DNA of 64,000 nt from Ylistrum balloti. Taxonomy: Eukaryota. The DNA lies in assembly GCF_031769215.1 (NCBI RefSeq), contig NW_026781917.1, positions 1,612,001 through 1,676,000 on the forward strand, given 5' to 3'. Below, one piece after another: positions 1 to 59,176 of this stretch (position 1 is the first letter of the stretch; each line of letters begins with the position of its first letter). The notes beneath the pieces were generated by a model. The model was not told where the DNA came from. It was given only the letters and a program-made list of their open reading frames with translations, and ran no database searches. Position numbers and translations under genes: made by a program.

Positions 1-513
1 ACAATGATCTTTGATGACGTTTATTGTGACAATGATGTTTGATGACGTTTATTGTGACAATGATCTTTGATGACGTTTATTGTGACAATGATCTTTGATC
101 GTGTATAGTGACAATGATCTTTGATGACGTTTATTGTGACAATGATGACGTTTATTGTGACAATGATGTTTGATGACGTTTATTGTGACAATGATCTTTG
201 ATGACGTTTATTGTGACAATGATCTTTGATGACGTTTATTGTGACAATGATGTTTGATGACGTTTATTGTGACAATGATCTTTGATTACGTCCTTGGTAA
301 CAATGATCTTTGATGACGTTTATTGTGACAATGATGTTTGATCGTGTATAGTGACAATGATGTTTGATGACGTTTATTGTGACAATGATGTTTGATGACG
401 TTTATTGTGACAATGATGTTTGATGACGTTTATTGTGACAATGATGTTTGATCGTGTATAGTGACAATGATGTTTGATGACGTTTATTGTGACAATGATC
501 TTTGATCGTGTAT
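1..513. repeat. 28-bp tandem minisatellite (ACAATGATSTTTGATGACGTTTATTGTG) with a 26-bp variant, truncated by the window edge
   Basis: Unit read directly and repeated about 18 times; variant ACAATGATCTTTGATCGTGTATAGTG is interspersed. Confidence 0.95.
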
Positions 514-9694: not shown

Positions 9695-10700
9695 ACTCAT
9701 AGAATAAGATAAGACAGGATGTGATAATACTCATGGCATAAGATAAGACAGGATATCAGATTAGTCAAAGGATCAGATAAGACAGGATGTCAGAATACTC
9801 GTAGGATAAGATAAGACAGGATTTCAGTTTAGTCAAAGGATAAGATAAGACAGGATATCAGATTAGTCAAAGGATAAGACAAGACAGAATGTCAGATTAG
9901 TCAAAGGATCAGATAAGACAGGATATCAGAATACTCGTAGGATAAGATAAGACAGGATGTCAGATAAGTCAAAGGATAAGATAAGACAGGATATCAGATT
10001 AGTCAAAGGATAAGACAAGAAAGGATGTCAGATAAGTCAAAGGATAAGATAAGACAGAATGTCAGAATGCTCATGGGATAAGATAAGACAGGATTTCAGA
10101 TTAGTCAAAGAATAGATAAGACAGGATGTCAGATTGATCATGGGATAAGATAAGACAGGATGTCAGAATACTCGTAGGATAAGATAAGACAGGATGTCAG
10201 ATTAGTCAAAGGATAAGATAAGACAGTATGTCAGATTAGTCAAAGGATAAGAAAGGATGTCAGAATAGTCAAAGGATAAGATAAGACAGGATGTCAGTTT
10301 AGTCAAAGGATAAGATAAGACAGGATGTCAGTTTAGTCAAAGGATAAGATAAGACAGGATGTCAGTTTAGTCAAAGGATAAGATAAGACAGGATGTCAGT
10401 TTAGTCAAAGGATAAGATAAGACAGGATGTCAGATTAGTCAAAGAATAAGAAAGGATGTCAGAATAGTCAAAGGATAAGATAAGACAGGATGTCAGTTTA
10501 GTCAAAGGATAAGATAAGACAGGATGTCAGATTAGTCAAAGAATAAGATAAGACAGGATGTCAGAATACTCGTAGGATAAGATAAGACAGGATGTCAGAT
10601 AAGTCAAAGGATAAGATAAGACAGGATGTCAGATTAGTCAAAGGATAAGATAAGACAGGATGATAGAATATTCGAGGGATAAGATAAGACAGAGTGTCAG
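9695..10700. repeat. 34-bp tandem minisatellite (GGATAAGATAAGACAGGATGTCAGATTAGTCAAA), about 30 units
   Basis: Unit read directly; variants with AATACTCGTA and shortened GATAA tracts. Confidence 0.95.
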
Positions 10701-13342
10701 TTTTCGCTGCGGTCATATTAGACAATATCTTCAGAGTGCAAAGAAGACACAGTAGACATTTAAAGTTTTCTAGGTGCAAACCTCGTACCAAATATAAACA
10801 CAAACAAGACGTATGTACCGTATGTGCACAGACGCTGAGAAATATGCACTGCATTCTAGAAAGTTTAAATATTTCCATATGTTGGTCATAAATTGATTTA
10901 TATATAAATATGTATGTGTGTGTGTATGGATATAGGGGCACGGCTGTTACTTGAGGTCAAAGGTCAGGTCAAGGTCGATTACACGACTGGCTCGTAGTAT
11001 GATATTCGGGAGATGATACCACTTTTCTGTTATGCATATGTCGTTATCGACTGCCAACTCAAATGTTTTCGACGGTTTTTTTAAGAACACTGGAATGTGT
11101 TTTATAGAACTTACCGTCCTGTTAGCACTATTTCACCCACAATACATTACGGTTTTGCGGTTTTACGTGTTTTTACTTCTCTAATTCCGAAACACGTGGT
11201 TCTCGTGAGTGGATGTGCAGATGCACGTGTTGGTATATGCAGGTTTTAGCTATTGATAAGTAAACCTTGTCGAGTTACTGGTGTCTGTATCTACGAGGTA
11301 TTTACATACCATTTATCTTCATTAGTGGTTTACATAAATAGTGCAAGGTGTCAATGGATATTTAAACCAGTAGTTTTCAACATTCCTGCAGTTAACCTAT
11401 GTTTCTGCTGACAATTTGTTATTTTGTGTAAATTCTACAATTATCTTGACCAATTATATTAGTTAAACATTGTCTTAGTGGACTAAACAAACCAATTTCA
11501 TACAATACTGAAAACGGAATAGTCTGAACTCGAAATAAATATTACTAATTCTAACTGGCTTGTTTTCAGGGCAATTTTACCACAAAGGCAACCATGATTT
11601 ATTTTCATGATTTCAGAGAATTCCGTTTGAGTAGTATAGATTAATTTAGAAAGTGTGATGGATACTTTCATTTGTAACCAGCTGTAACTGGGTAATTAAA
11701 TACGGATTCTAGTGTCGCATTTATAACTGCCTAATCCGATTTCCCCTGTATTCCGATTGTAAAAACCACACATAATTTATTTAACTGAAAAATGTAGGGT
11801 AAAAGAACAAAAAATAAAAAATAAAAAAAATAAAAAACAAAATCGTGGATACCAGTATTATGTTGGACCAATGTACTTTACGGAATGAATGATGACTGGA
11901 CGGAGTGGACAAATGTGAGTTGGACACTGTCCTCTCTTATTAGCCATTACATGTGTAAACCATCTTATGAATGTACTATTAATTAATTCCTTAACGTAAG
12001 GATGGGATACCTAAAAGCCTTGACCACTCCTATTCAGAACACTCATTAATTATCGATAGGGCCATCGGTCAGACAACTTCGGCCACTCATGATTAGTTAG
12101 AGCTGTGAGCGGCGTCGGATGTTTAGGAGGGGGAGGGGCATGTGCGCTGGCGTGTAAACACAGCCCAGCATCAACCCAACCATAGAATGCATTACTGCTG
12201 TTATTGGTATGGGGTTCAAAAGATATGAAATATGTAACATCTTTTAAAAATAGTATCAGAGGCACTGTAAGGGGCATTTTAGTATCATTATGAATTTAAA
12301 CAGCTGCATGTCATTCAAAACAGTACCAGCTCTCGGAATTGGAAAATTGGTATAGTTTTATTCCGAAGAAAATCTCGGGGAAATGTATGTTTTATGATTG
12401 TGATAAAGAACATATCTTTAGAGTTTACATTTCCTCAATCTGTTCCTTTTTTATAAACTGCTGTCAACACCAGCTGAGCGGGGGCATTAGGGGTGGAGAG
12501 CCGAGATGCGTTCTTGTAGCATCTCTCACTACAGAGCTAACCATAGTATAGTGGTACTGCTGAGACGTCCCAAAGCAAGTTATCTTTTACAGCAATCGTA
12601 GCGTGTTTATCAGGATAAGATGAGAGGGGCCCGATAGTCACTGAACGGCCGATACATATTTACTCCACATTGGACTAATCAGCAGTGTTATTGGACGAGT
12701 TATTAGAGGGGTGCGTTCGTGTATATTTCCCAAGCAATACTAGTAGGGTGCGTTCGATTACACTTCTCCAGTTTTTTTCTCTCCACCGGTGGCAGGGCTG
12801 TGCAGTTTTCTTCACATTCGGAACACGCCTACCGAAGGAGGAATACTGTACGTTAAACCCTATTTATTTCAACGGGGATTTGATTTATCACGTAGCTGCA
12901 GTTGTTTTGACAGACCTGAGTGGAATCTGTAGTGTTGTCCTCTTCATAACAGAGGCGTGTGTGCAGCAGTGGTGACATTCGTTGGGAGTATTAAGCATAC
13001 TGCGTACATTGAATTTTTCCAATAGCTATTCGGAGTACCTTTATTACACTGAGGTAAACAGGGTTTTATTTTCATTGGAATACACAGTGTGAATATCATT
13101 TCAGTCTGAAAAATCAACACAGGTCGTGGTAAGAAATTTGCATGTTTCATCAATGTCGTAGACTTCATTTCAGGATTTTGTTGAATCTGTGTCGTGTTCT
13201 GAAAATCATCCGGATTGTTTCTAGTTTTGGATAACCTTTGATCTATATAAACAAAAAACTCCGATATTGTATCTTTGGTTCTACCAAAAATACATCTATT
13301 TGTTACCTTCGCGACAAGGGTTTCAATGTTTTCATCTTGATT

Positions 13343-13750
13343 ACAATTGTTTACACACTGTTACCTGGACGATAGTTGTTTTAACACTGTTACCTTGACG
13401 ACAGTTGTTTTCATACTGTTACCTTGACGACAGTTGTTTTCATACTGTTACCTTGACGGCAGTTGTTTCCACACTGTTACCCAGACGACAGTTGTTTTCA
13501 TACTGTTACCTTGACGACAGTTGTTTTCATACTGTTACCTTGACGGCAGTTGTTTCCACACTGTTACCCAGACGACAGTTGTTTTCATACTGTTACCTTG
13601 ACGACAGTTGTTTTCACACTGTAACCTTGACGACAGTTGTTTTCATACTGTTACCTTGACGAAAGACGTTTCAACAATGTTACCTTGACGAAAGACGTTT
13701 CAACAATGTTACCTTGACGACAATTGTTTCAACAATATTACCTTGACGGT
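13343..13750. repeat. 29-bp tandem minisatellite (CAGTTGTTTTCATACTGTTACCTTGACGA) containing an 87-bp higher-order unit
   Basis: Unit read directly; the trimer GACGA/GACGG/CCAGACGA is repeated twice. Confidence 0.9.
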
Positions 13751-32400: not shown

Positions 32401-35400
32401 TGTAGTCTGCTTTGCGAAAGTTAATCACCGACAATTAAGACATCATATACAACGAATACTCTATAGCACGACATAGTCCGATTCGCGAAAGACCGTGAAA
32501 ATTAGTAAACAAAAAGAAATTTCGGTTAACAGTATCATGTTCGATGTTAGCGCTGTTTTTGGTAAAATTTTTATGTATAAGATGTCAATTTCAAACTTTA
32601 GATGGGATACTCGACAAAGTTAACAAAAAGACAAACAAAACGTATAACCATACCACTAAAACCACACGTATCAATCTATATTACAAGTAACCATTCAGTC
32701 AATAAGACGCTTTTTAATAGGATTTAATAGGATAATAGTGAACGCAGGAATTTCTGCCTCTGTATTCACATCAATACAATGTATTATTAATATAAACATA
32801 ATATTAGACTAGATATAAGACGCTGTATGATCGTACTTCAGTTCAAGATCTTTCCAGAAATCGTCTAGGTGTTTTTCAAAATCATGAACATTAAGTGATG
32901 AAATTACCCATTTTGTTAGGATTCACTAACTCGGAAAAATCTAATGACAGTTTTGTGTCATGATTGGTATTCCCAGCTATTTTAACCAATTCCTTATCTA
33001 AATGCGAGTTAACATTACGATGTTTTCCCAAACATTTTGCTACATCAGCTGCCAAAATTACTGAATAAGGCGCTCCATACATTTTCATTAGTCTTGTATC
33101 TGTCTCAGTAAACTTGATGTAATAGAAAAATACGTGACTCTTATAATTGTGATCTCTTGGATGTTAAGAATTTATGTTCAAAATACAGATAAGCTGTAGA
33201 AGAATGTGTCTGAGGAATACCCTACAAAAAAATAAGAGGAAGCGGTAGTCTGTCTACAAACTGTTGTATGCCGATATAAAAAAAATCCTTCCAAATTCCA
33301 AACTCATGACCTTCAAAAAATTTATGAACTTAAGATTTAAACACATTCCCAAACCTAGTATTTTTATAATTTAATCAGGTATTAATGTCAAACTAAGTCA
33401 ACATGTATGTATCAGGTTCATTGGTTGGGTTGGGGGTTGGTTGACCTGTAGCATGCTCTTATAACATATTCTGATCATTTAAAAAAAGCGATGCCAATTT
33501 AGAAAGAACAAAAAAAATGAGAGGGTAATTTCAACTATGGCAAGACAAGCTGTTGCTGTCAAGTAAGAAAGAAAATATCTTAACCACAAGATATCCACTG
33601 GAATGTAAACACTGTTGAGTTGCGATGGCCCTGTTTTGGAGCCTCTATTTGCTAGCATGAATGCATTGCTTAATATGATGTAAACTTTGTCAAGTTAGAA
33701 TGGGTAAAACGACTAACATTAGGCAGTAGTTATTTGTCTGATATGCGCCCTCGTAGATTTCATAGCGCCAATCCATATCGCAGACATACTTGAATAATGT
33801 TCTTAATGTTATATTGCACTGTCGTCAAAATGGCCCTCTTGCGCTTCCTTTAGTATGTGTGATTTACATGAGTGTCCAGGCATCAAGCATTGAGTTTTAA
33901 ATATCATATCTACTCGGATGGCTGAATCATCAATTATGAATTTCGTCATTTTGGGTCTGACTATAAGTAATAACATTTTATTATGTTTTTTCTACATCTT
34001 GTGATTACAAATGATAAATTACTGCCTTTTTATGCCGTATTTCCAGTTGACTAACATTGCTAATGGGGTTTCATATTTTACATACACAATATATAAAATA
34101 AAATTGTATATCCGCTGTTCCACTATTCAAAAGATATTGATTGTTCACATATTTCTGTAGGGTTCTCCTTGTTCTAAGAATGTAATATAACATCATTAAT
34201 TTTCGTGGGAGATTTGTTTTCGTTGATTTTTGTGATCAACGAGTTTATATTTCTAATGTTTAATTATACAATTCTGATTTTAATTGAATAATAGAGTTAA
34301 TTTATGAAATTAAGAATCGTGTCAACGAAAAAATAAATTCATGTGAAAATATTTAACTGTATAAATTTATAGATTTACGAGATAAAGTCGACTCGTTTCT
34401 CATGCAGCATGTCGTAACATCAGACTATGCATTATTTTCGCTCACAGTTGATCGTTTTTTGATATACCTAACACTTTTGTCTTTCTGCCAGATATACAAT
34501 ATAGTTGTTGTTCTGTAAATGGAAACCTTCAGAATAGATAAATTCTCCTTTACTATATTTTGAAAATGTATTATCGTTACAGCTGGTGATTGACAAGGCA
34601 AAACCATTGGTCCGTTTTGGGATGATGCATCTGATGGCCACTAATTTATGTGTTGTTATCGTAACCGCAGTTACGGAAACAGCCGAAGATTACCGACAGG
34701 ATTACTTCAACAACCTGTTGAAATACCAGGCTCTCAACAACATCACACCGAGTAAGTCTTAATAATTGAAATATCCATAGCCTAATTTTGATATGATTAT
34801 GACGTATTAAATGAAAACTGAATCGATTTTATTTTCATGCTTTACGAATGACGATTATTAAAACCAAGTTATTTTTTTACAATTTCAAGAAATAAAGAAG
34901 GACGAGACAGCTGTATGATGCAGTTCAGTTCATTGTTTTGTTTTACTGTATCAGCTTCTAAATCCGTAAGAAAACATTCACTCGTGTGTCTTGTATAAAA
35001 TCTCTGTCTCGTTATACTTTTAAATCGAAAATCAGCAATAAACTAATCGTACTTATTGTTCTTAAAATTGCAGAAGACAATATGACTGGAAGTTGCTATC
35101 GACAGGAGACACTAGCTCGATCTGCCTCTCCGTACCTCTTCCCAAGTCTTATCATCTACAGTATCATCGCTGCTGGTATCATCTACCGCCTCTACCAGTA
35201 CATCGGTGTGAGAATCAAGCAGAGGTGGCCTAGTCACACTTCACTGACCAGCTCTGTACCGGCAGGGGCAGCAGCAATCGACTGTGAAAAGGCCAACAAG
35301 GGGCTGTTCTTAGGTCTCCTGGTGGCCGTACTCACTCTCATCGCCATGGCAATTTTCTTCGTGTTTGATACGAGGGTAGATTCACCCGACACTGCCATTA

Positions 35401-35975
35401 AGGTCTTTTTCACCACCGAGATAATCCTCATGGTCATCACAAGTGTCGGTATTGTCTGGGGATACATGCGTCTGTCCATCCTGAAGTTCCTGAAGACCAT
35501 ATTTTTCTCTGTTGATTCGGTCTTGTTGCTTGTGGCATTGGCAGGATCCTACATCTACTTGTGTTTCACTTTGATTTCTGTTTTCTCCTTCTGTTCGGAG
35601 ATGGGGACGGATACGATCAAGGGAATCCTGAGTCTGGTGACGATCGCCCTAGCTCTTTGTCAGATCACTCTGCAGACCGTCTTTATCCTCGACGGCCTTT
35701 GCCGTTGTGCCGAGAACGACGAACAAATGATGGCTAAACCTGGTCGTGCTGTTGTTACCTTCCTTCTCATCTGTAACCTGGCAATGTGGATCGTCAGCAT
35801 GTTCGAAATGAAGAAAACTAAGGTGGTCGAAATGCATGAAAATTTCTACGGAATTTTGGCGTGGAATATTATAAATCACCTTTGTGTTCCTCTCCTGATT
35901 TTCTTTAGGTTTCATTCGGCCATTTGTCTGTCCAAAATATGGTATAACGCTTACCAGAAGGAAAAGGTGCCATAA
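14251..35975 (+). CDS. otop: Otopetrin-family proton channel (OtopLc-like), 6 coding exons, 637 aa
   Basis: Family motifs YLRLGAL, FTFVQTFF, RFGMMHLMATNLC, SPYLFP, LQTVFI, FLLICNLAMW and FRFHS. Exon lengths 218+121+343+161+169+902=1914 nt with consistent phases. Orthologue/subfamily not assignable by eye. Confidence 0.93.
16041..16790 (+). repeat. Purine-rich (GA) low-complexity tract with a G-quadruplex motif at 16194-16215
   Basis: Strong G/A strand skew; GGGGGG-A-GGGGG-T-GGG-AA-GGGG. Confidence 0.7.
17091..17246. repeat. 24-bp trinucleotide-based repeat (TCGTCGTTGCCGTTGTCGTACTCG), about 6.5 units
   Basis: Read directly. Confidence 0.9.
17666..18381. promoter_or_regulatory. Cluster of six CACGTG E-boxes plus a YY1-like CAAGATGGCCGC in otopetrin intron 1
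   Basis: CACGTG at 17666, 17727, 17758, 17894, 18108 and 18376; CpG-rich patch near 17890-17925. Function is inferred. Confidence 0.45.
23557..23677 (+). CDS. otop: Otopetrin exon 2 (TM1)
   Basis: ccatttcag| ... CTGGAG|gtaata; SSLVKLLCGLYALIIVVLGIVFS. Confidence 0.88.
23856..24198 (+). CDS. otop: Otopetrin exon 3 (TM2, cytoplasmic loop, start of TM3)
   Basis: ttttcag| ... TTG G|gtacgt; contains HAGEGINFYLRLGAL. Confidence 0.9.
24588..24748 (+). CDS. otop: Otopetrin exon 4 (TM3-TM4)
   Basis: ttttccag| ... CACAAG|gtaaca; AFACGSVILDGF...LLFTFVQTFFLFKNHK. Confidence 0.9.
24768..24876. repeat. 31-bp tandem repeat (3.5 copies) carrying ACCGGAAAT, 20 nt after otopetrin exon 4
   Basis: ACGAACATAACCGGAAATGTTG at 24768, 24799 and 24830 (variant), partial copy at 24860. 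Confidence 0.85.
27116..27597 (-). mobile_element. Non-autonomous Helentron/HINE-like element
   Basis: 5' end AACAAGAGGCCCATTGGGC...GCTCACCT; internal TGACCTTGA motifs and GGAC-repeat tract; 3' end CAGGTGGGCTGAAAA (subterminal inverted repeat). Recognised from memory of bivalve repeat families. Confidence 0.7.
29370..29415 (-). ncRNA. Degenerate minimal type I hammerhead ribozyme (Penelope-like-element style)
   Basis: - strand: TTATCGTCA CTGAG GACC-CTAAAA-GGTC GAAAC GTC TGTATGATAA. Helices I and II, palindromic ACGU helix III and a GUC site are present; the core is 2 nt short. Confidence 0.55.
32215..32534. mobile_element. MITE with TACTGT...ACAGTA termini and three internal TAGTCYG-TT-GCGAAA subrepeats
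   Basis: Imperfect terminal inverted repeats (TACTGTAAAACTGATTT / AAATTTCGGTTAACAGTA), TA at both ends. Confidence 0.6.
34583..34751 (+). CDS. otop: Otopetrin exon 5 (TM5)
   Basis: cgttacag| ... CCG A|gtaagt; LVIDKAKPLVRFGMMHLMATNLCVV. Confidence 0.92.
35074..35975 (+). CDS. otop: Otopetrin exon 6 (TM6-TM12 and stop)
   Basis: aaattgcag| acceptor, in frame with the 329-aa ORF 34986-35975; seven hydrophobic segments. Confidence 0.95.
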
Positions 35976-37403: not shown

Positions 37404-37587
37404 CGGTGAATAGGTATATACCTACTCGGTGAATAGGTAAATACCTACTCGGTGAATAGGTAAATACCTACTCGGTGAACAGGTACATACCCTCTCGTTG
37501 AATAAGTACATACCTACTCGGTGAACAGGTACATATCTACTCGGTGAACAGGTACATAACTACTCGGTGGACAGGTACATAACTACT
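37404..37587. repeat. 23-bp tandem repeat (GGTGAATAGGTAWATACCTACTC), about 8 units
   Basis: Read directly; progressively diverges to the right. Confidence 0.9.
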
Positions 37588-40700: not shown

Positions 40701-40763
40701 TTGATAATTCAGAATAAGATACAGTAGAGGCAAACAATGAATTAAACTGATGCCATAGAGGTA

Positions 40764-43226
40764 TTTCGTCCTTCTAGGACTTGTCAGTGATGTTACATCA
40801 TACTGCTGTTTCGTCCTGCTAGGACTTGTCAGTGATGTTACATCATACCGCTGTTTCGTCCTTCTAGGACTTGTCAGTGATGTTACATCATACCGCTGTT
40901 TCGTCCTTCTAGGACTTGTCAGTGATGTTACATCATACTGCTGTTTCGTCCTGCTAGGACTTGTCAGTGATGTTACATCATACCGCTATTTCGTCCTTCT
41001 AGGACTTGTCAGTGATGTTACATCATACAGCTGTTTCGTCCTTCTAGGACTTGTCAGTGATGTTACATCATACCGCTGTTTCGTCCTTCTAGGACTTGTC
41101 AGTGATGTTACATCATACAGCTGTTTCGTCCTTCTAGGACTTGTCGGTGATGCTACATCATACTGCTGTTTCGTCCTTCTAGGACTCATCAGTGATGCTA
41201 TATCATACTGCTGTTTCGTCCTTCTAGGACTTGTCAGTGATGTTACATCATACAGCTGTTTCGTCCTTCTAGGACTTGTCAGTGATGTTACATCATACAG
41301 CTGTTTCGTCCTTCTAGGACTTGTCAGTGATGCTACATCATACAGCTGTTTCGTCCTTCTAGGACTTGTCAGTGATGATGTCCTTCTAGGACATCATACA
41401 GCTGTTTCGTCCTTCTAGGACTTGTCAGTGATGTTACATCATACTGCTGTTTCGTCCTTCTAGGACTTGTCAGTGATGTTACATCATACTGGTGTTCCGT
41501 CCTTCTAGGACTTGTCAGTGATGTTACATCATACAGCTGTTTCGTCCTTCTAGGACTTGTCAGTGATGTTACATCATACAGCTGTTTCGTCCTTCTAGGA
41601 CTTGTCAGTGATGTTACATCATACTGCTGTTTCGTCCTTCTAGGACTTGTCAGTGATGTTACATCATACAGTCCTTCTAGGACTTGTCAGTGATGTTACA
41701 TCATACAGCTGTTTCGTCCTTCTAGGACTTGTCAGTGATGTTACATCATACAGCTGTTTCGTCCTTCTAGGACTTGTCAGTGATGTTACATCATACAGCT
41801 GTTTCGTCCTTCTAGGACTTGTCAGTGATGTTACATCATACTGCTGTTTCGTCCTTCTAGGACTTGTCAGTGATGTTACATCATACTGCTATTTCGTCCT
41901 TCTAGGACTTGTCAGTGATGTTACATCATACAGCTGTTTCGTCCTTCTAGGACTTGTCAGTGATGTTACATCATACTGCTGTTTCGTCCTTCTAGGACTT
42001 GTCAGTGATGTTACATCATACAGCTGTTTCGTCCTTCTAGGACTTGTCAGTGATGTTACATCATACAGCTGTCTCGTCCTTCTAGGACTTGTCAGTGATG
42101 TTACATCATACTGCTGTTTCGTCCTGCTAGGACTTGTCAGTGATGCTACATCATACAGCTGTCTCGTCCTGCTAGGACTTGTCAGTGATGCTACATCATA
42201 CCGCTGTTTCGTCCTTCTAGGACTTGTCAGTGATGTTACATCATACTGCTGTTTCGTCCTGCTAGGACTTGTCAGTGATGCTACATCATACCGCTGTTTC
42301 GTCCTTCTAGGACTTGTCAGTGATGTTACATCATACTGCTGTTTCGTCCGTCTAGGACTTGTCAGTGATGGTACATCATACTGCTGTTTCGTCCTTCTAG
42401 GACTTGTCAGTGATGTTACATCATACCGCTGTTTCTTCCTTCTAGGACTTGTCAGTGATGTTACATCATACAGCTGTTTCGTCCTTCTAGGACTTGTCAG
42501 TGATGTTACATCATACAGCTGTTTCGTCCTTCTAGGACTCGTCAGTGATGTTACATAATACAGCTGTTTCTTTAGTGATGTTACATCATACAGCTGTTTC
42601 GTCCTTCTAGGACTTGTCAGTGATGTTACATCATACTGCTGTTTCGTCCGTCTAGGACTTGTCAGTGATGGTACATCATCCTTCTAGGACTTGTCAGTGA
42701 TGTTACATCATACAGCTGTTTCGTCCTTCTAGGACTCGTCAGTGATGTTACATAATACAGCTGTTTCGTCCTTCTAGGACTTGTCAGTGATGTTACATCA
42801 TACAGCTGTTTCGTCCTTCTAGGACTTGTCAGTGATGTTACATAATACAGCTGTTTCGTCTTCTAGGACTTGTCAGTGATGTTACTTGTCCTTCTAGGTG
42901 TCAGTGATGTTACATCATACTGCTGTTTCGTCCTTCTAGGACTTGTCAGTGATGTTACATAATACAGCTGTTTCGTCCTTCTAGGACTTGTCAGTGATGT
43001 TACATAATACAGCTGTTTCGTCCTTCTAGGACTTGTCAGTGATGTTACATCATACAGCTGTTTCGTCCTTCTAGGACTTGTCAGTGATGTTACATAATAC
43101 AGCTGTTTCGTCCTTCTAGGACTTGTCAGTGATGTTACATAATACAGCTGTTTCGTCCTTCTAGGACTTGTCAGTGATGTTACATAATACAGCTGTTTCG
43201 TCCTTCTAGGACTCGCCAGTAATGCT
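40764..43226. repeat. 45-bp tandem satellite, roughly 54 units
   Basis: Unit TACAGCTGTTTCGTCCTTCTAGGACTTGTCAGTGATGTTACATCA read directly, with occasional internal deletions. Confidence 0.97.
40764..43226 (-). ncRNA. Tandem array of hammerhead-ribozyme motifs (one per 45-nt monomer)
   Basis: Reverse complement UGAUG-UAA-CAUCA CUGAC(A/G)A GUCC-UAGAA-GGAC GAAA CAGCUGUA gives helix I, the CUGANGA core, helix II, GAAA, palindromic helix III and a GUA site in the correct order. Intact cores at 41156-41197, 42508-42551 and 42705-42748. Confidence 0.85.
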
Positions 43227-43620
43227 AAGGGCTAAGTTTGAAGCCTGTGAGGCGACTATGGAAAATACAAAATGATCAAAAGAAAAGTCAAAATCTAGAC
43301 GGGGAGGTGCCACATTATTAAGTAAAGTTCGTACATCATAATTTGAGAACAGCGTCAAGTACATGTATATTTCTGAACTGTGCCACTATTGAATGAATAA
43401 AAAAGTGGCCAGCAGGTTACGGCAAACCTCGGGGACGCGGGACTCTTAAAGATTGGAAACATAAGTGATATAAATGAAGTTGATTCGACCACCGGTCTTT
43501 GGGCTGAGCCAAGGTGAGGTTCAATAGGAGAAAAGGGGAAAGTTGTCTTGGGTGTCTTCCTCTGATACGTCAGGACAGATAATTTACCAGATTCGCCCGG
43601 AAACCTCACTGTCTAGGCTT

Positions 43621-50984: not shown

Positions 50985-51596
50985 CAGTGACCATTTCGTG
51001 TGTGCCTATTTCCGTCCTAACTTCTCAAACGATTTACGGTATATGATTTCCCCGTTGTCGGCCATTTTGGACCAAGTTTGATTTTTCAATATTTTTATGG
51101 ACATATACCTCAAATATTCAATTGTTTTCAATATTACAAACAAGTAATTGATAATCATAATTCGCATTACTTCAATTTAGTTTGCATGTAAATACCTTCT
51201 GTCCTTTGTAGTATATCCTCTTATGTTGTATATTGTAGCATTTGAGCTTGCTTTGTTTATGATAAGCTATTGAAAGCATAGTTAGCTTGAATACAAAACG
51301 AAATTAATCAAATCTTAATTTCATACAATCTCACAAGTAGGTTTAAGTCTGAAGCTGAACTAGGCCAGTTTGCTGAACCTACATGCAATGATTGAATTCG
51401 TTTGAATAATATCACAGTTAAGTTCATACACATGTACTTCTCTGAAATAATCAGATGTATTATATATATAGAGAGAATTAAGTTGTTGTATTATGGGAAT
51501 ATTGCTTCTCCTCGTCTAGATTTTAACATTTCTTTCAATCACTTAAGATTTTTTCAGTCGCCTCCTAGGTTTCCAAATTTAGGCCCTTGACATCCT

Positions 51597-51674
51597 TGAC
51601 GAGTCCTTGAAGGACGAAACAGCTGTATGATGTAACATCACTGACGAGTCCTTGAAGGACAGCTGTATAATGTA
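51597..51674 (+). repeat. About 1.6 inverted monomers of the 45-bp hammerhead satellite
   Basis: TGACGAGTCCTTGAAGGACGAAACAGCTGTATGATGTAACATCACTGACGAGTCCTTGAAGGACAGCTGTA. Confidence 0.9.
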
Positions 51675-53257
51675 GTATAATTAATATTTTGACTCTAGGG
51701 TATCTCATTCTATATTTGTATCAAAAGGTTTATTGCGGTCGTCATAGTGATCTCAAAGAGAAATATTCGATTTCTTTGTGCGACATGAAGCTGGACGTGT
51801 TTAATGTTCGTTGGTTTGCCTGTTGGTTCAATTGTTGTATACATTGTTTTCATCAGAGAACATGACATTTCTTACTAGGATTGACCAAAATGTACATGGC
51901 GTGTGTCGACGATGAAGCAGAAGGCGCTCACTCTTCCGGAGCAATTTCCCTTAGTACTTCTTCAGACTTATCCGTGTAAATCTGTCTATTGTCCTAATTT
52001 GATTGAATTTGAGTTCGGATTATTATTATTGACAGTTTGGTTTTCTTTTCTTTTTTCACTTGTGTCTCTTCTTTTGTACAATCTTTGTAAACAAATAATT
52101 ATGACATTATACCACACAAGCAATGTATCTTGACAAGATGCAGGCAACAGAAAATGGTTAAACATTTTACTTATGACATGGGAGAAGCTGAATTTTATCA
52201 GATTTATTGTTAAAGTAAGTAATAACAGTAGCACATTTATTATTTTTTTTGTCATAGTAAAAAGGATTTCATATATATGTCTGGTAAAGACTGAGTTAAA
52301 CAAAATATATCAAATGAAAAGGTGAATCTACCTTTTTCCCTGAACATATATTATTTCATTAACAGGTAAAATGTGGGGTTTTTTTCGTTTGTTTGTCGTC
52401 ATTTGAATTTAAATAGTGATAAAATGTTATCATTGGAGGTTCTAATTACACCACATGTATCCTTAACCACGTCTTTTGACCATATGAAATGTCGGCCGCG
52501 TCGTCGTCATCTTCAGCTGATTGGATTTTACTACTGATAATGGAAACTATCGGATGCAAAAGATCACGTGACATGCCATTTACTATTTAAATTCATTGAT
52601 AACTGGTGACAATATCGTTTAAAAATGTGTACAAAACTAGAAAACTGTCGATTACGGTTCCTAATTCTAAAAGGCCAAAAAATCTGTCTCAATATCGAGT
52701 AGTTGTGTACAAGTTACCAGGTGCTACTGATTTATAAATGACAATATCTTAGTGTTATCTATTTTTTGTATATTTCAGATAGTTCATTCCCTACTGATCA
52801 CATATTGACATCAGGAAATTGTTTATTATCTATCTCCTGTATTATGTGATATGCAATAAAATATTCCACCGAACAACATTGATTTTCTTCTTTATACATC
52901 TTCTTGTCATCTGTCAAGCTAATGTAACTAAACACTATCGATCCAACTGTAGTCACGTGTCTTCGAACTGCGCATGTCGAGTTCTCCTTTTGCAGTGGAT
53001 CTAGTTAGATTTCCTCTCTGGGATAAGTAAGTAATATCTATCAGAAATCCAAAATATGACCAGGACTCGTATTTTCACTGCAGTTCTGTTCAATATGTTG
53101 GCATTCCAAATACGACAGCTGCTTTAACTTCTTTCTAATAAGTTCCATACTCTTGCTTAATTAGAAACTTGACATTAGAATTGTCGTGACATTGACCTAT
53201 GACATCTTGTCCTCAGATTGATCTTAGATCTCGTTTTGCCATTGAACTAAGTGCTAA

Positions 53258-53759
53258 GACCTGCTGTCCTGATATTGACGTTGGAACTGTTGTCCTGGTA
53301 TTGACGTTGGACATGTTGCCCTGCTATTGACGTTGGACCTGTTTCCCTGCTAATGACGTTGGACCTGTTACCCTGATATTGAAGTTGGACCTGTTTCCCT
53401 GCTATTGACGTTGGACCTATTGCCCTGATATTGACGTTGGACCTGTTGCCCTACTATTGACGTTGGACCTGTTTCCCTGATATTGACGTTGGACCTGTTT
53501 CCCTGGTATTGACGTTGGATCTGTTGTCCTGCTGTTGACGTTGGACCTGTTTCCCTGCTAATAACGTTGGACCTGTTGTCCTGCTATTGACGTTGGACCT
53601 GTTGTCCTGCTATTGACGTTGGACCTGTTTCCCTGCTTATTACGTTGGACCTGTTGTCCTGCTATTGACGTTGGACCTGTTGTCCTGGTATTTAACTTGG
53701 ACCTGTTGCCCTGCTATTGACCTTGAACCTGCTGTCATGCTGATGACCGTGGATCTGTT
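53258..53759. repeat. 26-bp tandem minisatellite (GACGTTGGACCTGTTKYCCTGCTATT), about 19 units
   Basis: Read directly. Confidence 0.95.
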
Positions 53760-57073: not shown

Positions 57074-59176
57074 AAATGCTTTCTCTCCACAGTCAATATG
57101 TTACCTCTCCACAGTCAACATGTTACCTCTCCACAGTCACCTCTCCACAGTCAATATGTTACCCCTCCACAGTCAATATGTTACCTCAATGTTACCTCTC
57201 CACAGTCAATACGTTACCCCTCCACAGTCAATACGTTACCTCTCCACAGTTAATACGTTACCCCTCCACAGTCAATACGTTACCTCTCCACAGTCAATGT
57301 GTTACCCCTCCACAGTCAATATGTTACCTCTCCACAGTCAATATGTTACCCCTCCACAGTCAATATGTTACCTCAATATGTTACCTCTCCACAGTCAATA
57401 TGTTACCTCTCCACAGTCAATATGTTACCTCAATATGTTACCCCTCCACAGTCAATATGTTACCTCTCCACAGTCAATATGATACCTCTCCACAGTCACC
57501 CCTCCACAGTCAATACGTTACCCCTCCACAGTCAACATGTTACCTCAATATGTTACCCCACCACAGTCAATATGTTACCTCTCCACAGTCAATACGTTAC
57601 CTCTCCACAGTCAATATGTTACCTCTCCACAGTCAATATGTTACCCCACCAGTCAATATGTTACCTCTCCACAGTCAATATGTTACCCCACCATAGTCAA
57701 TATGTTACCTCTCCACAGTCAATATGTTACCTCTCCACAGTTAATACGTTACCCCTCCACAGTCAATATGTTACCCCTCCACAGTCAATATGTTACCTCT
57801 CCACAGTCAATATGTTACCCCTCCACAGTCAATATGTTACCTCTCCACAGTTAATACGTTACCTCTCCACAGTCAATATGTTACCCCTCCACAGTCAATA
57901 TGTTACCTCTCCACAGTCAATATGTCACCCCTCCACAGTCAATACGTTACCTCTCCACAGTCAATATGTTACCTCAATATGTTACCTCTCCACAGTCAAT
58001 ATGTTACCCCTCCACAGTCAATATGTTACCCTCCACAGTCAATATGTTACCCCTCCACAGTCAATATGTTACCCCTCCACAGTCAATACGTTACCTCTCC
58101 ACAGTCAATATGTTACCCCTCCACAGTCAATACGTTACCCCTCCACAGACAATATGTTACCTCTCCACAGTTAATACGTTACCTCTCCACAGTCACCTCT
58201 CCACAGTCAATATGTTACCCTCCACAGTCAATATGTTACCTCTCCACAGTCAATTCGTTACCCCTCCACAGTCAATACGTTACCCCTCCACAGTCAATAC
58301 GTTACCTCTCCACAGTCAATATGTTACCTCTCCACAGTTAATACGTTACCCCTCCACAGTCAATACGTTACCTCTCCACAGTCAATATGTCACCTCTCCA
58401 CAGTCAATATGTTACCTCAATATGTTACCTCTCCACAGTCAATATGTTACCTCTCCACAGTCAATATGTCACCTCTCCACAGTCAATACGTTACCTCTCC
58501 ACAGTCAATATGTTACCTCAATATGTTACCTCTCCACAGTCAATATGTTACCTCTCCACAGTTAATACGTTACCTCTCCACAGTCAATATGTTACCTCTC
58601 CACAGTCAATATGTTACCCCTCCACAGTCAATATGTTACCCCTCCACAGTAAATACGTTACCTCTCCACAGTAAATACGTTACCTCTCCACAGTCAATAT
58701 GTTACCTCTCCACAGTCACCTCTCCACAGTCAATATGTTACCTCTCCACAGTCAATATGTTACCTCTCCACAGTCAATATGTTACCTCAATATGTTACCC
58801 CACCATAGTCAATATGTTACCCCTCCACAGTCAATATGTTACCTCAATATGTTACCCCACCACAGTCAATATGTTACCCCTCCACAGTCAATATGTTACT
58901 CCTCCACAGTCAATATGTTACCTCAATATGTTACCCCACCACAGTCAATATGTTACCTCTCCACAGTCAATGTTACCTCTCCACAGTCAATATGTTACCT
59001 CAATATATTACCCCTCCACAGTCAATATGTTACCTCAATATGTTACCCCACCACAGTCAATATATTTCCTCTCCACAGTCAATACGTTACCCCTCCAGTC
59101 AATACGTTACCCCTCCACAGTCAATACGTTACCTCTCCACAGTCAAGACGTTACTTTTCCACAGTCAATATGTTAC
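57074..59176. repeat. 22-bp tandem satellite (CCTCTCCACAGTCAATATGTTA) with recurrent short deletion variants, about 95 units
   Basis: Read directly; accounts for all ORFs in the 57-59 kb track. Confidence 0.97.

What the first reader, a model, noticed from the sequence alone, without database searches (positions are those of the whole stretch)
40764..43226. A satellite made entirely of hammerhead ribozymes: about 54 back-to-back 45-nt motifs
Seen: the - strand monomer is UGAUG-UAA-CAUCA / CUGAC(A/G)A / GUCC-UAGAA-GGAC / GAAA / CAGCUGUA, with no sequence left over. Established: this is the hammerhead order (helix I, CUGANGA, helix II, GAAA, helix III, NUH). Minimal type I hammerheads with a palindromic helix III, which cleave as dimers, occur in Penelope-like elements, and known hammerhead satellites/retrozymes (newt satellite 2, Schistosoma Sm-alpha, Dolichopoda pDo500) have monomers of a few hundred nt. 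Inference: in a multimeric transcript the ACAGCUGU palindromes of adjacent monomers can form an 8-bp helix III in cis, giving a complete type III fold. Cleavage after each GUA would release exact 45-nt units that could circularise. To my knowledge a ribozyme-only satellite this short is unusual; I cannot confirm it is undescribed.
Basis: partly seen in the sequence, partly recalled or inferred. Interest (0 to 1): 0.92.

Follow-up and report, generated by a model that had tools for sequence, protein, structure and literature searches.

The report
Mostly dead hammerhead ribozyme minisatellite
A 2.4-kb stretch of a bivalve genome is about 53 head-to-tail copies of a 45-base hammerhead ribozyme with no spacer, but nearly all copies carry a mutation at an essential catalytic base, so it is most likely a ribozyme from a small mobile element that was multiplied as DNA.

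Summary
Window 40756-43226, minus strand, holds 53 tandem units. 48 are exactly 45 nt, and each unit is one complete hammerhead motif with no spare base.

- **Rfam:** the type I hammerhead model passes its gathering score for only two units.
- **Core:** 44 of 48 full-length units read CUGACAA, an uncompensated G8A change. Only three units keep G8.
- **Helix III:** its palindrome is broken in 23 of 48 units, with no compensating changes.
- **Origin:** a second copy of the same element lies 8 kb away in inverted orientation. It has a homologous leader of about 200 nt and only two hammerhead units, both with G8. The array's 5' edge unit also has G8. So G8 was ancestral, and the array grew from a G8A founder. 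G8A is a CpG-to-CpA change.
- **Setting:** no reverse transcriptase or endonuclease ORF was found in the window, and 11.6 % of the window is other minisatellites.

Best reading: the 3'-terminal hammerhead tandem of a short non-coding element, like a retrozyme or a Penelope pLTR, was expanded at the DNA level and is now largely inactive.

First readers of this scan noted at least ten more 45-bp hammerhead arrays elsewhere in this genome. I could not check them. I found no description of so short a ribozyme-only repeat in the searchable literature.

The parts
40756..43226 (-). Array of 53 hammerhead units plus a partial 5' edge unit, 45-nt period, no spacer
42711..42755 (-). Unit 10: canonical core CUGACGA (G8), intact palindrome. 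Helix I is perfect in the type I frame and has one U.C mismatch as a local hairpin.
   Evidence: Rfam RF00163 35.8 bits, above gathering
42514..42558 (-). Unit 14: identical to unit 10 (CUGACGA, G8)
   Evidence: Rfam RF00163 35.8 bits
41161..41205 (-). Unit 44: core CUGAUGA (G8, C7U), non-palindromic helix III (CAGCAG)
43188..43226 (-). Partial 5' edge unit joined to the leader; core CUGGCGA (G8 kept, A6G)
43227..43427 (-). Non-coding leader of about 200 nt upstream of the array, shared with the second copy
   Evidence: blastn 43427-43227 vs 51368-51588, 65 % over 223 columns, E 7e-14; the proximal 80 nt are 77 % identical
51368..51588 (+). Leader of the second, inverted copy of the element
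51589..51680 (+). Unexpanded hammerhead tail of the second copy: two units, both G8. The first has U3 (UUGACGA); the second has CUGACGA but lacks GAAAC. About 10 nt of a third unit follow.

Best explanation
This is a DNA minisatellite that grew from the 3'-terminal hammerhead tandem of a short, non-coding mobile element. The element is a leader of about 200 nt followed by two or more head-to-tail type I hammerhead units, of the retrozyme or Penelope pLTR-derived kind. Two adjacent units are the smallest arrangement that lets the palindromic helix III form an 8-bp stem in cis, so the element carried a built-in tandem duplication. Unequal crossing-over or replication slippage could expand that duplication. 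At this locus the unit that expanded had already changed CUGACGA to CUGACAA. This is G8A, a CpG-to-CpA transition at the base that pairs with C3 and whose 2'-OH is the proposed general acid. About 50 of the 53 sites are therefore predicted to be catalytically crippled. A minus-strand transcript would still fold into a string of hammerhead-shaped junctions, but at most three cores could cleave at normal rates. Shown: the anatomy, the fold, the core states, the shared leader and the G8 state of the relatives. Inferred: the DNA-level mode of expansion, the loss of activity and the CpG route.
For: Core counts: CUGACAA 44, CUGACGA 2, CUGAUGA 1, CCGACAA 1 of 48. The second copy, with a homologous leader, has only two units, both G8. 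The array's 5' edge unit is also G8, so G8 is ancestral and A8 derived. At the C7-G8 CpG the outcomes are 45 CA against 1 TG. Independent deamination would give roughly equal numbers of each, so one founder was amplified. The other CpG, C11.1-G12, is intact in 47 of 48 units, so the array is young. Helix-breaking changes are frequent and uncompensated: a U.C mismatch in helix I in 8 units and a broken palindrome in 23 of 48. Only 9 of 45 junctions are perfectly paired even when position 8 is ignored. Variants lie in blocks, five units carry internal indels, and a 135-bp period matches better than the 45-bp period (92 % vs 88 %), as in satellites shaped by unequal exchange. 11.6 % of the window is other minisatellites of 22-34 bp, so this genome expands short repeats readily. 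No RT or GIY-YIG ORF was found in the window. The natural core covariation is U3-A8, not C3-A8 (PMC4209133). G8 is the proposed general acid (PMC6155905).
Against: No activity assay exists for a C3/A8 core in this context, and residual cleavage is possible. The scan's first readers report at least ten other 45-bp hammerhead arrays in the genome (unchecked). That dispersal fits transposition of array-bearing RNA as well as independent local expansions. With only two copies in hand, the element's family and its link to Penelope-like elements are not demonstrated.
Confidence: 0.65

Rival explanations
1. Working ribozyme satellite: minus-strand multimers fold into cis type III hammerheads, cut after each GUA and release 45-nt or 90-nt RNAs that may circularise. 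A8 units either keep weak activity or are cut in trans by the few G8 cores, since all units share the same helix I and III arms.
For: The type III junction is the minimum-energy fold of a palindrome-to-palindrome stretch (-18.2 kcal/mol, z -3.5, 45 % of the ensemble). Two type I units co-fold into a double hammerhead. Two units pass Rfam's gathering score. The GUA site is kept in 47 of 48 units.
Against: G8A is uncompensated in 44 of 48 units, and the palindrome is broken in 23 of 48. No junction combines a G8 core with perfect helices. The two CUGACGA units lose their helix I hairpin in the predicted cis fold. Even intact minimal hammerheads of this kind cleave poorly in vitro as dimers (PMC4209133). 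There is no sign of selection for pairing.
Confidence: 0.12
2. RNA-templated origin: the array was made in one step at insertion. A reverse transcriptase copied a small circular or concatemeric hammerhead RNA by rolling circle, or slipped repeatedly on the element's 3' tandem. The many arrays in the genome would then be separate retrotransposition products, and this one came from an A8 template.
For: Many dispersed 45-bp arrays of very different copy number are reported in the same genome (unchecked). Rolling-circle models exist for retrozymes and Penelope-like elements (PMC4209133, PMC7229834, bioRxiv 10.64898/2026.07.22.740005). The array is continuous with the element's leader and ends after a helix I hairpin in both copies.
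Against: A template with an A8 core should not self-cleave or circularise well. Block-wise variants, indel units and the 135-bp periodicity point to later DNA exchange. No reverse transcriptase was found nearby. Downstream flanks share no collinear homology, and no target-site signature was seen.
Confidence: 0.15
3. Chance resemblance: an ordinary minisatellite that merely looks like a hammerhead.
For: The window is rich in unrelated minisatellites.
Against: All hammerhead elements are present in the right order. Rfam hits pass the gathering score. G8 relatives share a leader. The same helix II and III sequence occurs in a 565-bp retrozyme-like repeat from a lake metagenome.
Confidence: 0.02

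Closest known systems
Metazoan non-LTR retrozymes and hammerhead satellites (newt satellite 2, Schistosoma Sm-alpha, Dolichopoda pDo500, coral, mussel and axolotl repeats; PMC7229834)
   Same: Head-to-tail genomic repeats with one canonical type I hammerhead per unit. Helix II is 4 bp and helix III is a short stem with a palindromic loop that favours dimeric or neighbour-assisted cleavage. They are non-coding and linked to Penelope pLTRs (bioRxiv 10.64898/2026.07.22.740005).
   Different: Known units are 150-450 bp (565 bp in locus L003) and carry a long non-ribozyme segment that forms the body of the circular RNA. Here the unit is 45 bp, the ribozyme alone. The non-ribozyme leader occurs once, outside the array. 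Most cores carry G8A.
Penelope-like element minimal hammerheads (Cervera and de la Pena 2014, PMC4209133; Lunse et al. 2017, not readable here)
   Same: Stripped-down hammerheads that need a second copy to build helix III. They are found at the ends of retroelements and mostly occur as dispersed remnants. Core variants occur (U3-A8).
   Different: Those motifs have a long helix II (6-8 bp), a bulged base and no helix III, and they sit in pLTRs flanking an RT/GIY-YIG ORF. Here helix II is 4-5 bp and helix III has 2 bp plus an AGCU loop. No RT or EN ORF was found in the window. The A8 is not compensated by U3.
Satellites born from transposable-element termini (the general model discussed in bioRxiv 10.64898/2026.07.22.740005)
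   Same: An internal tandem duplication in a mobile element seeds an array that grows by unequal exchange. Copy number differs between insertions: 2 units in one copy here and 53 in the other.
   Different: The seed is a catalytic RNA motif whose dimeric working mode would explain why the element carried a tandem in the first place.

Membership tests
Hammerhead ribozyme (Rfam clan CL00010; type I RF00163) | Conserved core C3 U4 G5 A6 N7 G8 A9 ... G12 A13 A14 | tested here: not met
   Met in only 3 of 48 full units. 44 read CUGACAA (G8A) and 1 reads CCGACAA. GAAA is kept in 45 of 48. The array as a whole fails; the three G8 units pass.
Hammerhead ribozyme (Rfam clan CL00010; type I RF00163) | Three helices around the core and an NUH cleavage triplet | tested here: met
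   Helix I has 5 bp in 39 of 48 units and helix II has 4 bp in 47 of 48. GUA is kept in 47 of 48. The predicted minimum-energy fold is a three-way junction.
Hammerhead ribozyme (Rfam clan CL00010; type I RF00163) | Covariance-model score at or above the curated gathering score | tested here: inconclusive
   Two units score 35.8 bits against 34. The others score 19-29 bits (type I) or 28-43 bits against 48.5 (type III).
Hammerhead ribozyme (Rfam clan CL00010; type I RF00163) | Site-specific self-cleavage | not testable with these tools
   Needs in vitro transcription of multimers.
Non-LTR retrozyme | Tandem repeat with a type I hammerhead in every unit | tested here: met
   53 units, each a hammerhead motif. 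If an intact core is required, only 3 qualify.
Non-LTR retrozyme | Unit of 150-450 bp that includes a non-ribozyme segment | tested here: not met
   The unit is 45 bp with no spare base. The 200-nt leader is outside the repeat.
Non-LTR retrozyme | Expressed as linear and circular monomer RNAs | not testable with these tools
   No expression data available.
Penelope-like element (pLTR hammerhead) | Motif lies in a pseudo-LTR flanking an ORF with RT and GIY-YIG endonuclease | tested here: not met
   No Pfam RT or GIY-YIG hit in 31 ORFs scanned (most of those of 90 aa or more across the window, and all of 60 aa or more at 43.3-51.6 kb except the 62-aa ORF 51402-51590). The 8 kb between the two copies is included. 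Degraded or distant partners cannot be excluded.
Penelope-like element (pLTR hammerhead) | min-HHR architecture: no helix III, helix II of 6-8 bp, bulged base 5' of helix II | tested here: not met
   Helix II is GUCC/GGAC (4-5 bp) with no bulge. Helix III has 2 bp plus a palindromic AGCU loop, which is the canonical metazoan type I form (PMC4209133).

The most novel reading that the evidence does not exclude
The 45-bp arrays scattered through this bivalve genome are the smallest possible retrozyme: a mobile element whose repeat unit is nothing but the ribozyme. Intact (G8) arrays would be transcribed, cut into 45- or 90-nt RNAs through cis pairing of neighbouring palindromes, ligated into tiny circles and copied back into DNA by a Penelope-type reverse transcriptase by rolling circle. 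The locus studied here would be a decayed G8A product of that cycle.
Probability: 0.1. Interest if true: 0.85.

Novelty: new variant of a known kind. Interest (0 to 1): 0.5.

Why it matters
Hammerhead-bearing repeats in animals are thought to spread as small circular RNAs, and every described case carries a few hundred bases of non-ribozyme sequence. A repeat reduced to the bare 45-nt ribozyme marks the lower size limit of such repeats. It also shows concretely how a ribozyme that works as a dimer can seed a satellite: the element must carry two adjacent copies, and that tandem is then free to expand. This array also gives a natural test of function. It expanded after the essential G8 was lost through a CpG transition, which argues that growth did not need catalysis. 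The other arrays reported in the genome could show whether intact versions behave differently.

Tried and rejected
- **Monomer in public collections:** exact-pattern scans for the monomer found nothing in metagenome contigs, prokaryotic genome contigs or viral contigs.
- **Looser hammerhead pattern:** this found only three metagenome contigs. They hold ordinary repeats of about 565 bp, not short arrays.
- **Other arrays through the repeat-derived ORF:** searching with ORF 41647-42558 gave no homologues. That ORF is an artefact of a period divisible by three.
- **Scan notes by sequence or detailed words:** both returned nothing.
- **tRNA-like, SINE-type origin of the leader:** no tRNA was found.
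- **RT or endonuclease nearby:** none was found.
- **Lunse et al. 2017 (PMC5785218):** not held in the library.
- **Quantitative G8A data:** none was found in the searchable library. The statement that G8A strongly lowers activity rests on established hammerhead biochemistry (the 1990 Ruffner mutagenesis, recalled from memory) and on the C3-G8 to U3-A8 covariation reported in PMC4209133.
- **Selection test:** variant rates are about 1 % at core positions and 1.8-3 % at other positions, but the units are not independent, so this is inconclusive.

Full report
**1. Is it there?**

Yes. On the minus strand, window 40756-43226 is a head-to-tail array with a 45-nt period. Tandem Repeats Finder reports 46.7 copies at 40764-42885 (88 % matches) and 7.6 copies at 42888-43224 (96 %). 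Cutting in the cleavage-site frame gives 53 units. 48 are exactly 45 nt, and five carry internal deletions or rearrangements (30, 37, 56, 72 and 77 nt).

The consensus unit splits into these parts:
- a 5+3+5 hairpin (helix I);
- a seven-base CUGA box;
- a 4+5+4 hairpin (helix II);
- GAAA;
- CAGCUGUA.

A pattern for the core and helix II matches 53 times in the window, against 0.01 expected from shuffles.

**2. Is it a hammerhead?**

In form, yes. Rfam's type I model (RF00163) passes its gathering score at two units (35.8 against 34 bits). In the permissive scan almost every unit is picked up below threshold, by the type I model (19-29 bits) or by the type III model RF00008 (28-43 bits against 48.5).

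The type III alignments run from the palindrome of one unit to the palindrome of the next. Folding agrees:
- The 54-nt stretch between two palindromes has the three-way junction as its minimum-energy and centroid structure (-18.2 kcal/mol, 45 % of the ensemble, z = -3.5).
- Trimers and tetramers contain the same junction.
- Two type I units co-fold into a double hammerhead with an 8-bp shared helix III.

The architecture is a 6-bp helix I, a 4-bp GUCC/GGAC helix II, and a helix III of two pairs around a palindromic AGCU. This is the canonical metazoan type I hammerhead as described in PMC4209133. It is not that paper's Penelope min-HHR, which has a long helix II. The same helix II and III sequence occurs in a 565-bp tandem repeat from a lake metagenome (L003).

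**3. Is it likely to work?**

Mostly not. Of the 48 full units:
- 44 read CUGACAA;
- 2 read CUGACGA;
- 1 reads CUGAUGA;
- 1 reads CCGACAA.

Position 8 is therefore A in 45 of 48 units. G8 pairs with C3, and its 2'-OH is the proposed general acid (PMC6155905). The natural variant known from Penelope elements is the compensated U3-A8 pair (PMC4209133). Here C3 is unchanged.

Other helix defects are also common:
- The helix III palindrome is intact in 25 units. It is broken to CAGCAG in 13 and to CAGCGG in 6, and four further units carry other changes. None is compensated.
- Eight units have a U.C mismatch in helix I.

I scored each of 45 assessable junctions between neighbours for the cis type III fold. 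Only 9 are perfectly paired even when position 8 is ignored, and none combines perfect helices with G8. Junctions 9/10 and 43/44 pass relaxed criteria. Junction 13/14 was not scored because unit 13 is truncated, but its 3' palindrome and GUA are intact. That makes three junctions with a G8 core in all.

The two CUGACGA units are flawless in the type I frame, which is why they pass Rfam. In the cis frame the predicted fold loses their helix I hairpin.

**4. Where did it come from?**

The core pattern also hit 51596-51619 on the plus strand. Reading that region shows a second, inverted copy of the same element 8.2 kb away.
- **Shared leader:** the leaders are homologous, 43427-43227 against 51368-51588, at 65 % over 223 columns (E 7e-14). 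The proximal 80 nt are 77 % identical.
- **Short tail:** in the second copy the leader is followed by only two hammerhead units and a stub.
- **Downstream flanks:** they share no collinear homology.

So the hammerheads sit at the 3' end of a short element, and the two insertions differ in copy number: 2 against 53.

Both units of the short copy have G8 (UUGACGA, and CUGACGA with a GAAAC deletion). The 5' edge unit of the large array, next to the leader, also has G8 (CUGGCGA). G8 is therefore the ancestral state and A8 is derived.

In DNA the ancestral C7-G8 is a CpG. G8A is its CpG-to-CpA transition, and the single CUGAUGA unit is the CpG-to-TpG outcome. The 45:1 excess of CA over TG is not what independent deamination in each unit would give. 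It indicates that one mutated founder unit was amplified. The other CpG, C11.1-G12, is still intact in 47 of 48 units, so the array is young.

Several features are what unequal exchange produces:
- variants lie in blocks;
- five units carry indels;
- the match improves at a 135-bp period (92 % against 88 %).

The window also contains many unrelated minisatellites of 22-34 bp, 11.6 % of its length. Short-repeat expansion is evidently common in this genome.

**5. Context**

The window is from a bivalve mollusc. An otopetrin exon at 34986-35975 has its best named match in Pinctada imbricata at 81 %. The array lies about 4.8 kb beyond that exon.

I ran 31 ORFs through Pfam. These were most of the ORFs of 90 aa or more across the window, and all but one of those of 60 aa or more between 43.3 and 51.6 kb. 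None gave a reverse-transcriptase or GIY-YIG hit, and no tRNA-like sequence was found. Membership in a Penelope-like element is therefore not shown. The element is best called a non-autonomous sequence like a retrozyme or a pLTR.

First readers of this scan have noted at least ten other 45-bp hammerhead arrays, of 9 to about 105 units, and some 63-bp ones on other pieces of the same genome. One note (s1-258844) made the same G8A observation on this stretch. I could not see those sequences, so I do not know whether the other arrays are intact.

**6. Known or new?**

The searchable literature describes three related things:
- hammerhead repeats of 150-450 bp (PMC7229834);
- Penelope minimal hammerheads, mostly as single dispersed motifs, with dimers and trimers only as laboratory constructs (PMC4209133);
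- pLTR fragments as the source of retrozymes that then grow by unequal crossover (bioRxiv 10.64898/2026.07.22.740005).

Searches for hammerhead with minisatellite, bivalve or oyster found no ribozyme-only short-period array. The monomer is absent from the metagenome, prokaryotic and viral contig collections. I rate it a new variant of a known kind.

**7. Verdict**

The functional claim for this locus is weakened by the near-fixed G8A and the decayed palindromes.

The most likely history has three steps. An element carried two adjacent hammerheads, the minimum for cis or dimeric activity. One unit lost G8 through a CpG transition. That unit was then multiplied at the DNA level.

Interest is moderate for this locus. 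It would rise sharply if intact sister arrays prove to be transcribed and processed.

Noticed in passing
window 51368-51680 (+): Second, inverted copy of the leader-plus-hammerhead element with only two units. Its first unit has U3 with G8, and the big array has C3 with A8. These are the two single-step intermediates between C3-G8 and the natural U3-A8 pair. This may be coincidence.
   Followed up: partly
window 34986-35975 (+): Large otopetrin exon (Pfam PF03189, E 2.5e-72). The best named relative is Pinctada imbricata at 81 %, which places the window in a bivalve mollusc. Another first-reader note (s1-258922) says a conserved glutamate is replaced; I did not check this.
   Followed up: partly
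window 1-506, 9697-10700, 13336-13748, 37404-37587, 53258-53759, 57083-59176: Many unrelated minisatellites with periods of 22-34 bp. Together with the hammerhead array they cover 11.6 % of the window. The 22-bp array at 57-59 kb has a strong C-over-G skew.
   Followed up: no
L003 1-1839 and L002 (lake metagenome contigs): Tandem repeat of about 565 bp with one type I hammerhead per unit (CUGAUGA, GUCC/GGAC helix II, CAGCUG helix III). It looks like an ordinary retrozyme from an unidentified freshwater eukaryote.
   Followed up: no
window 41647-42558 (+): A 303-codon ORF runs through the array only because the period is divisible by three (15-aa peptide repeat). It has no homologues. One minus-strand frame is also free of stops.
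   Followed up: yes
window 40756-43226, unit position 42: Helix III position 16.3 is T, A or G in 26, 15 and 7 units. CAGCGG to CAGCAG is a CpG transition, so one T-to-G change followed by CpG decay would explain the pattern.
   Followed up: partly
window 12659-12682 (-): An isolated weak match to the hammerhead core pattern with two mismatches (CUGAUUA ... GUAAA); probably chance.
   Followed up: no
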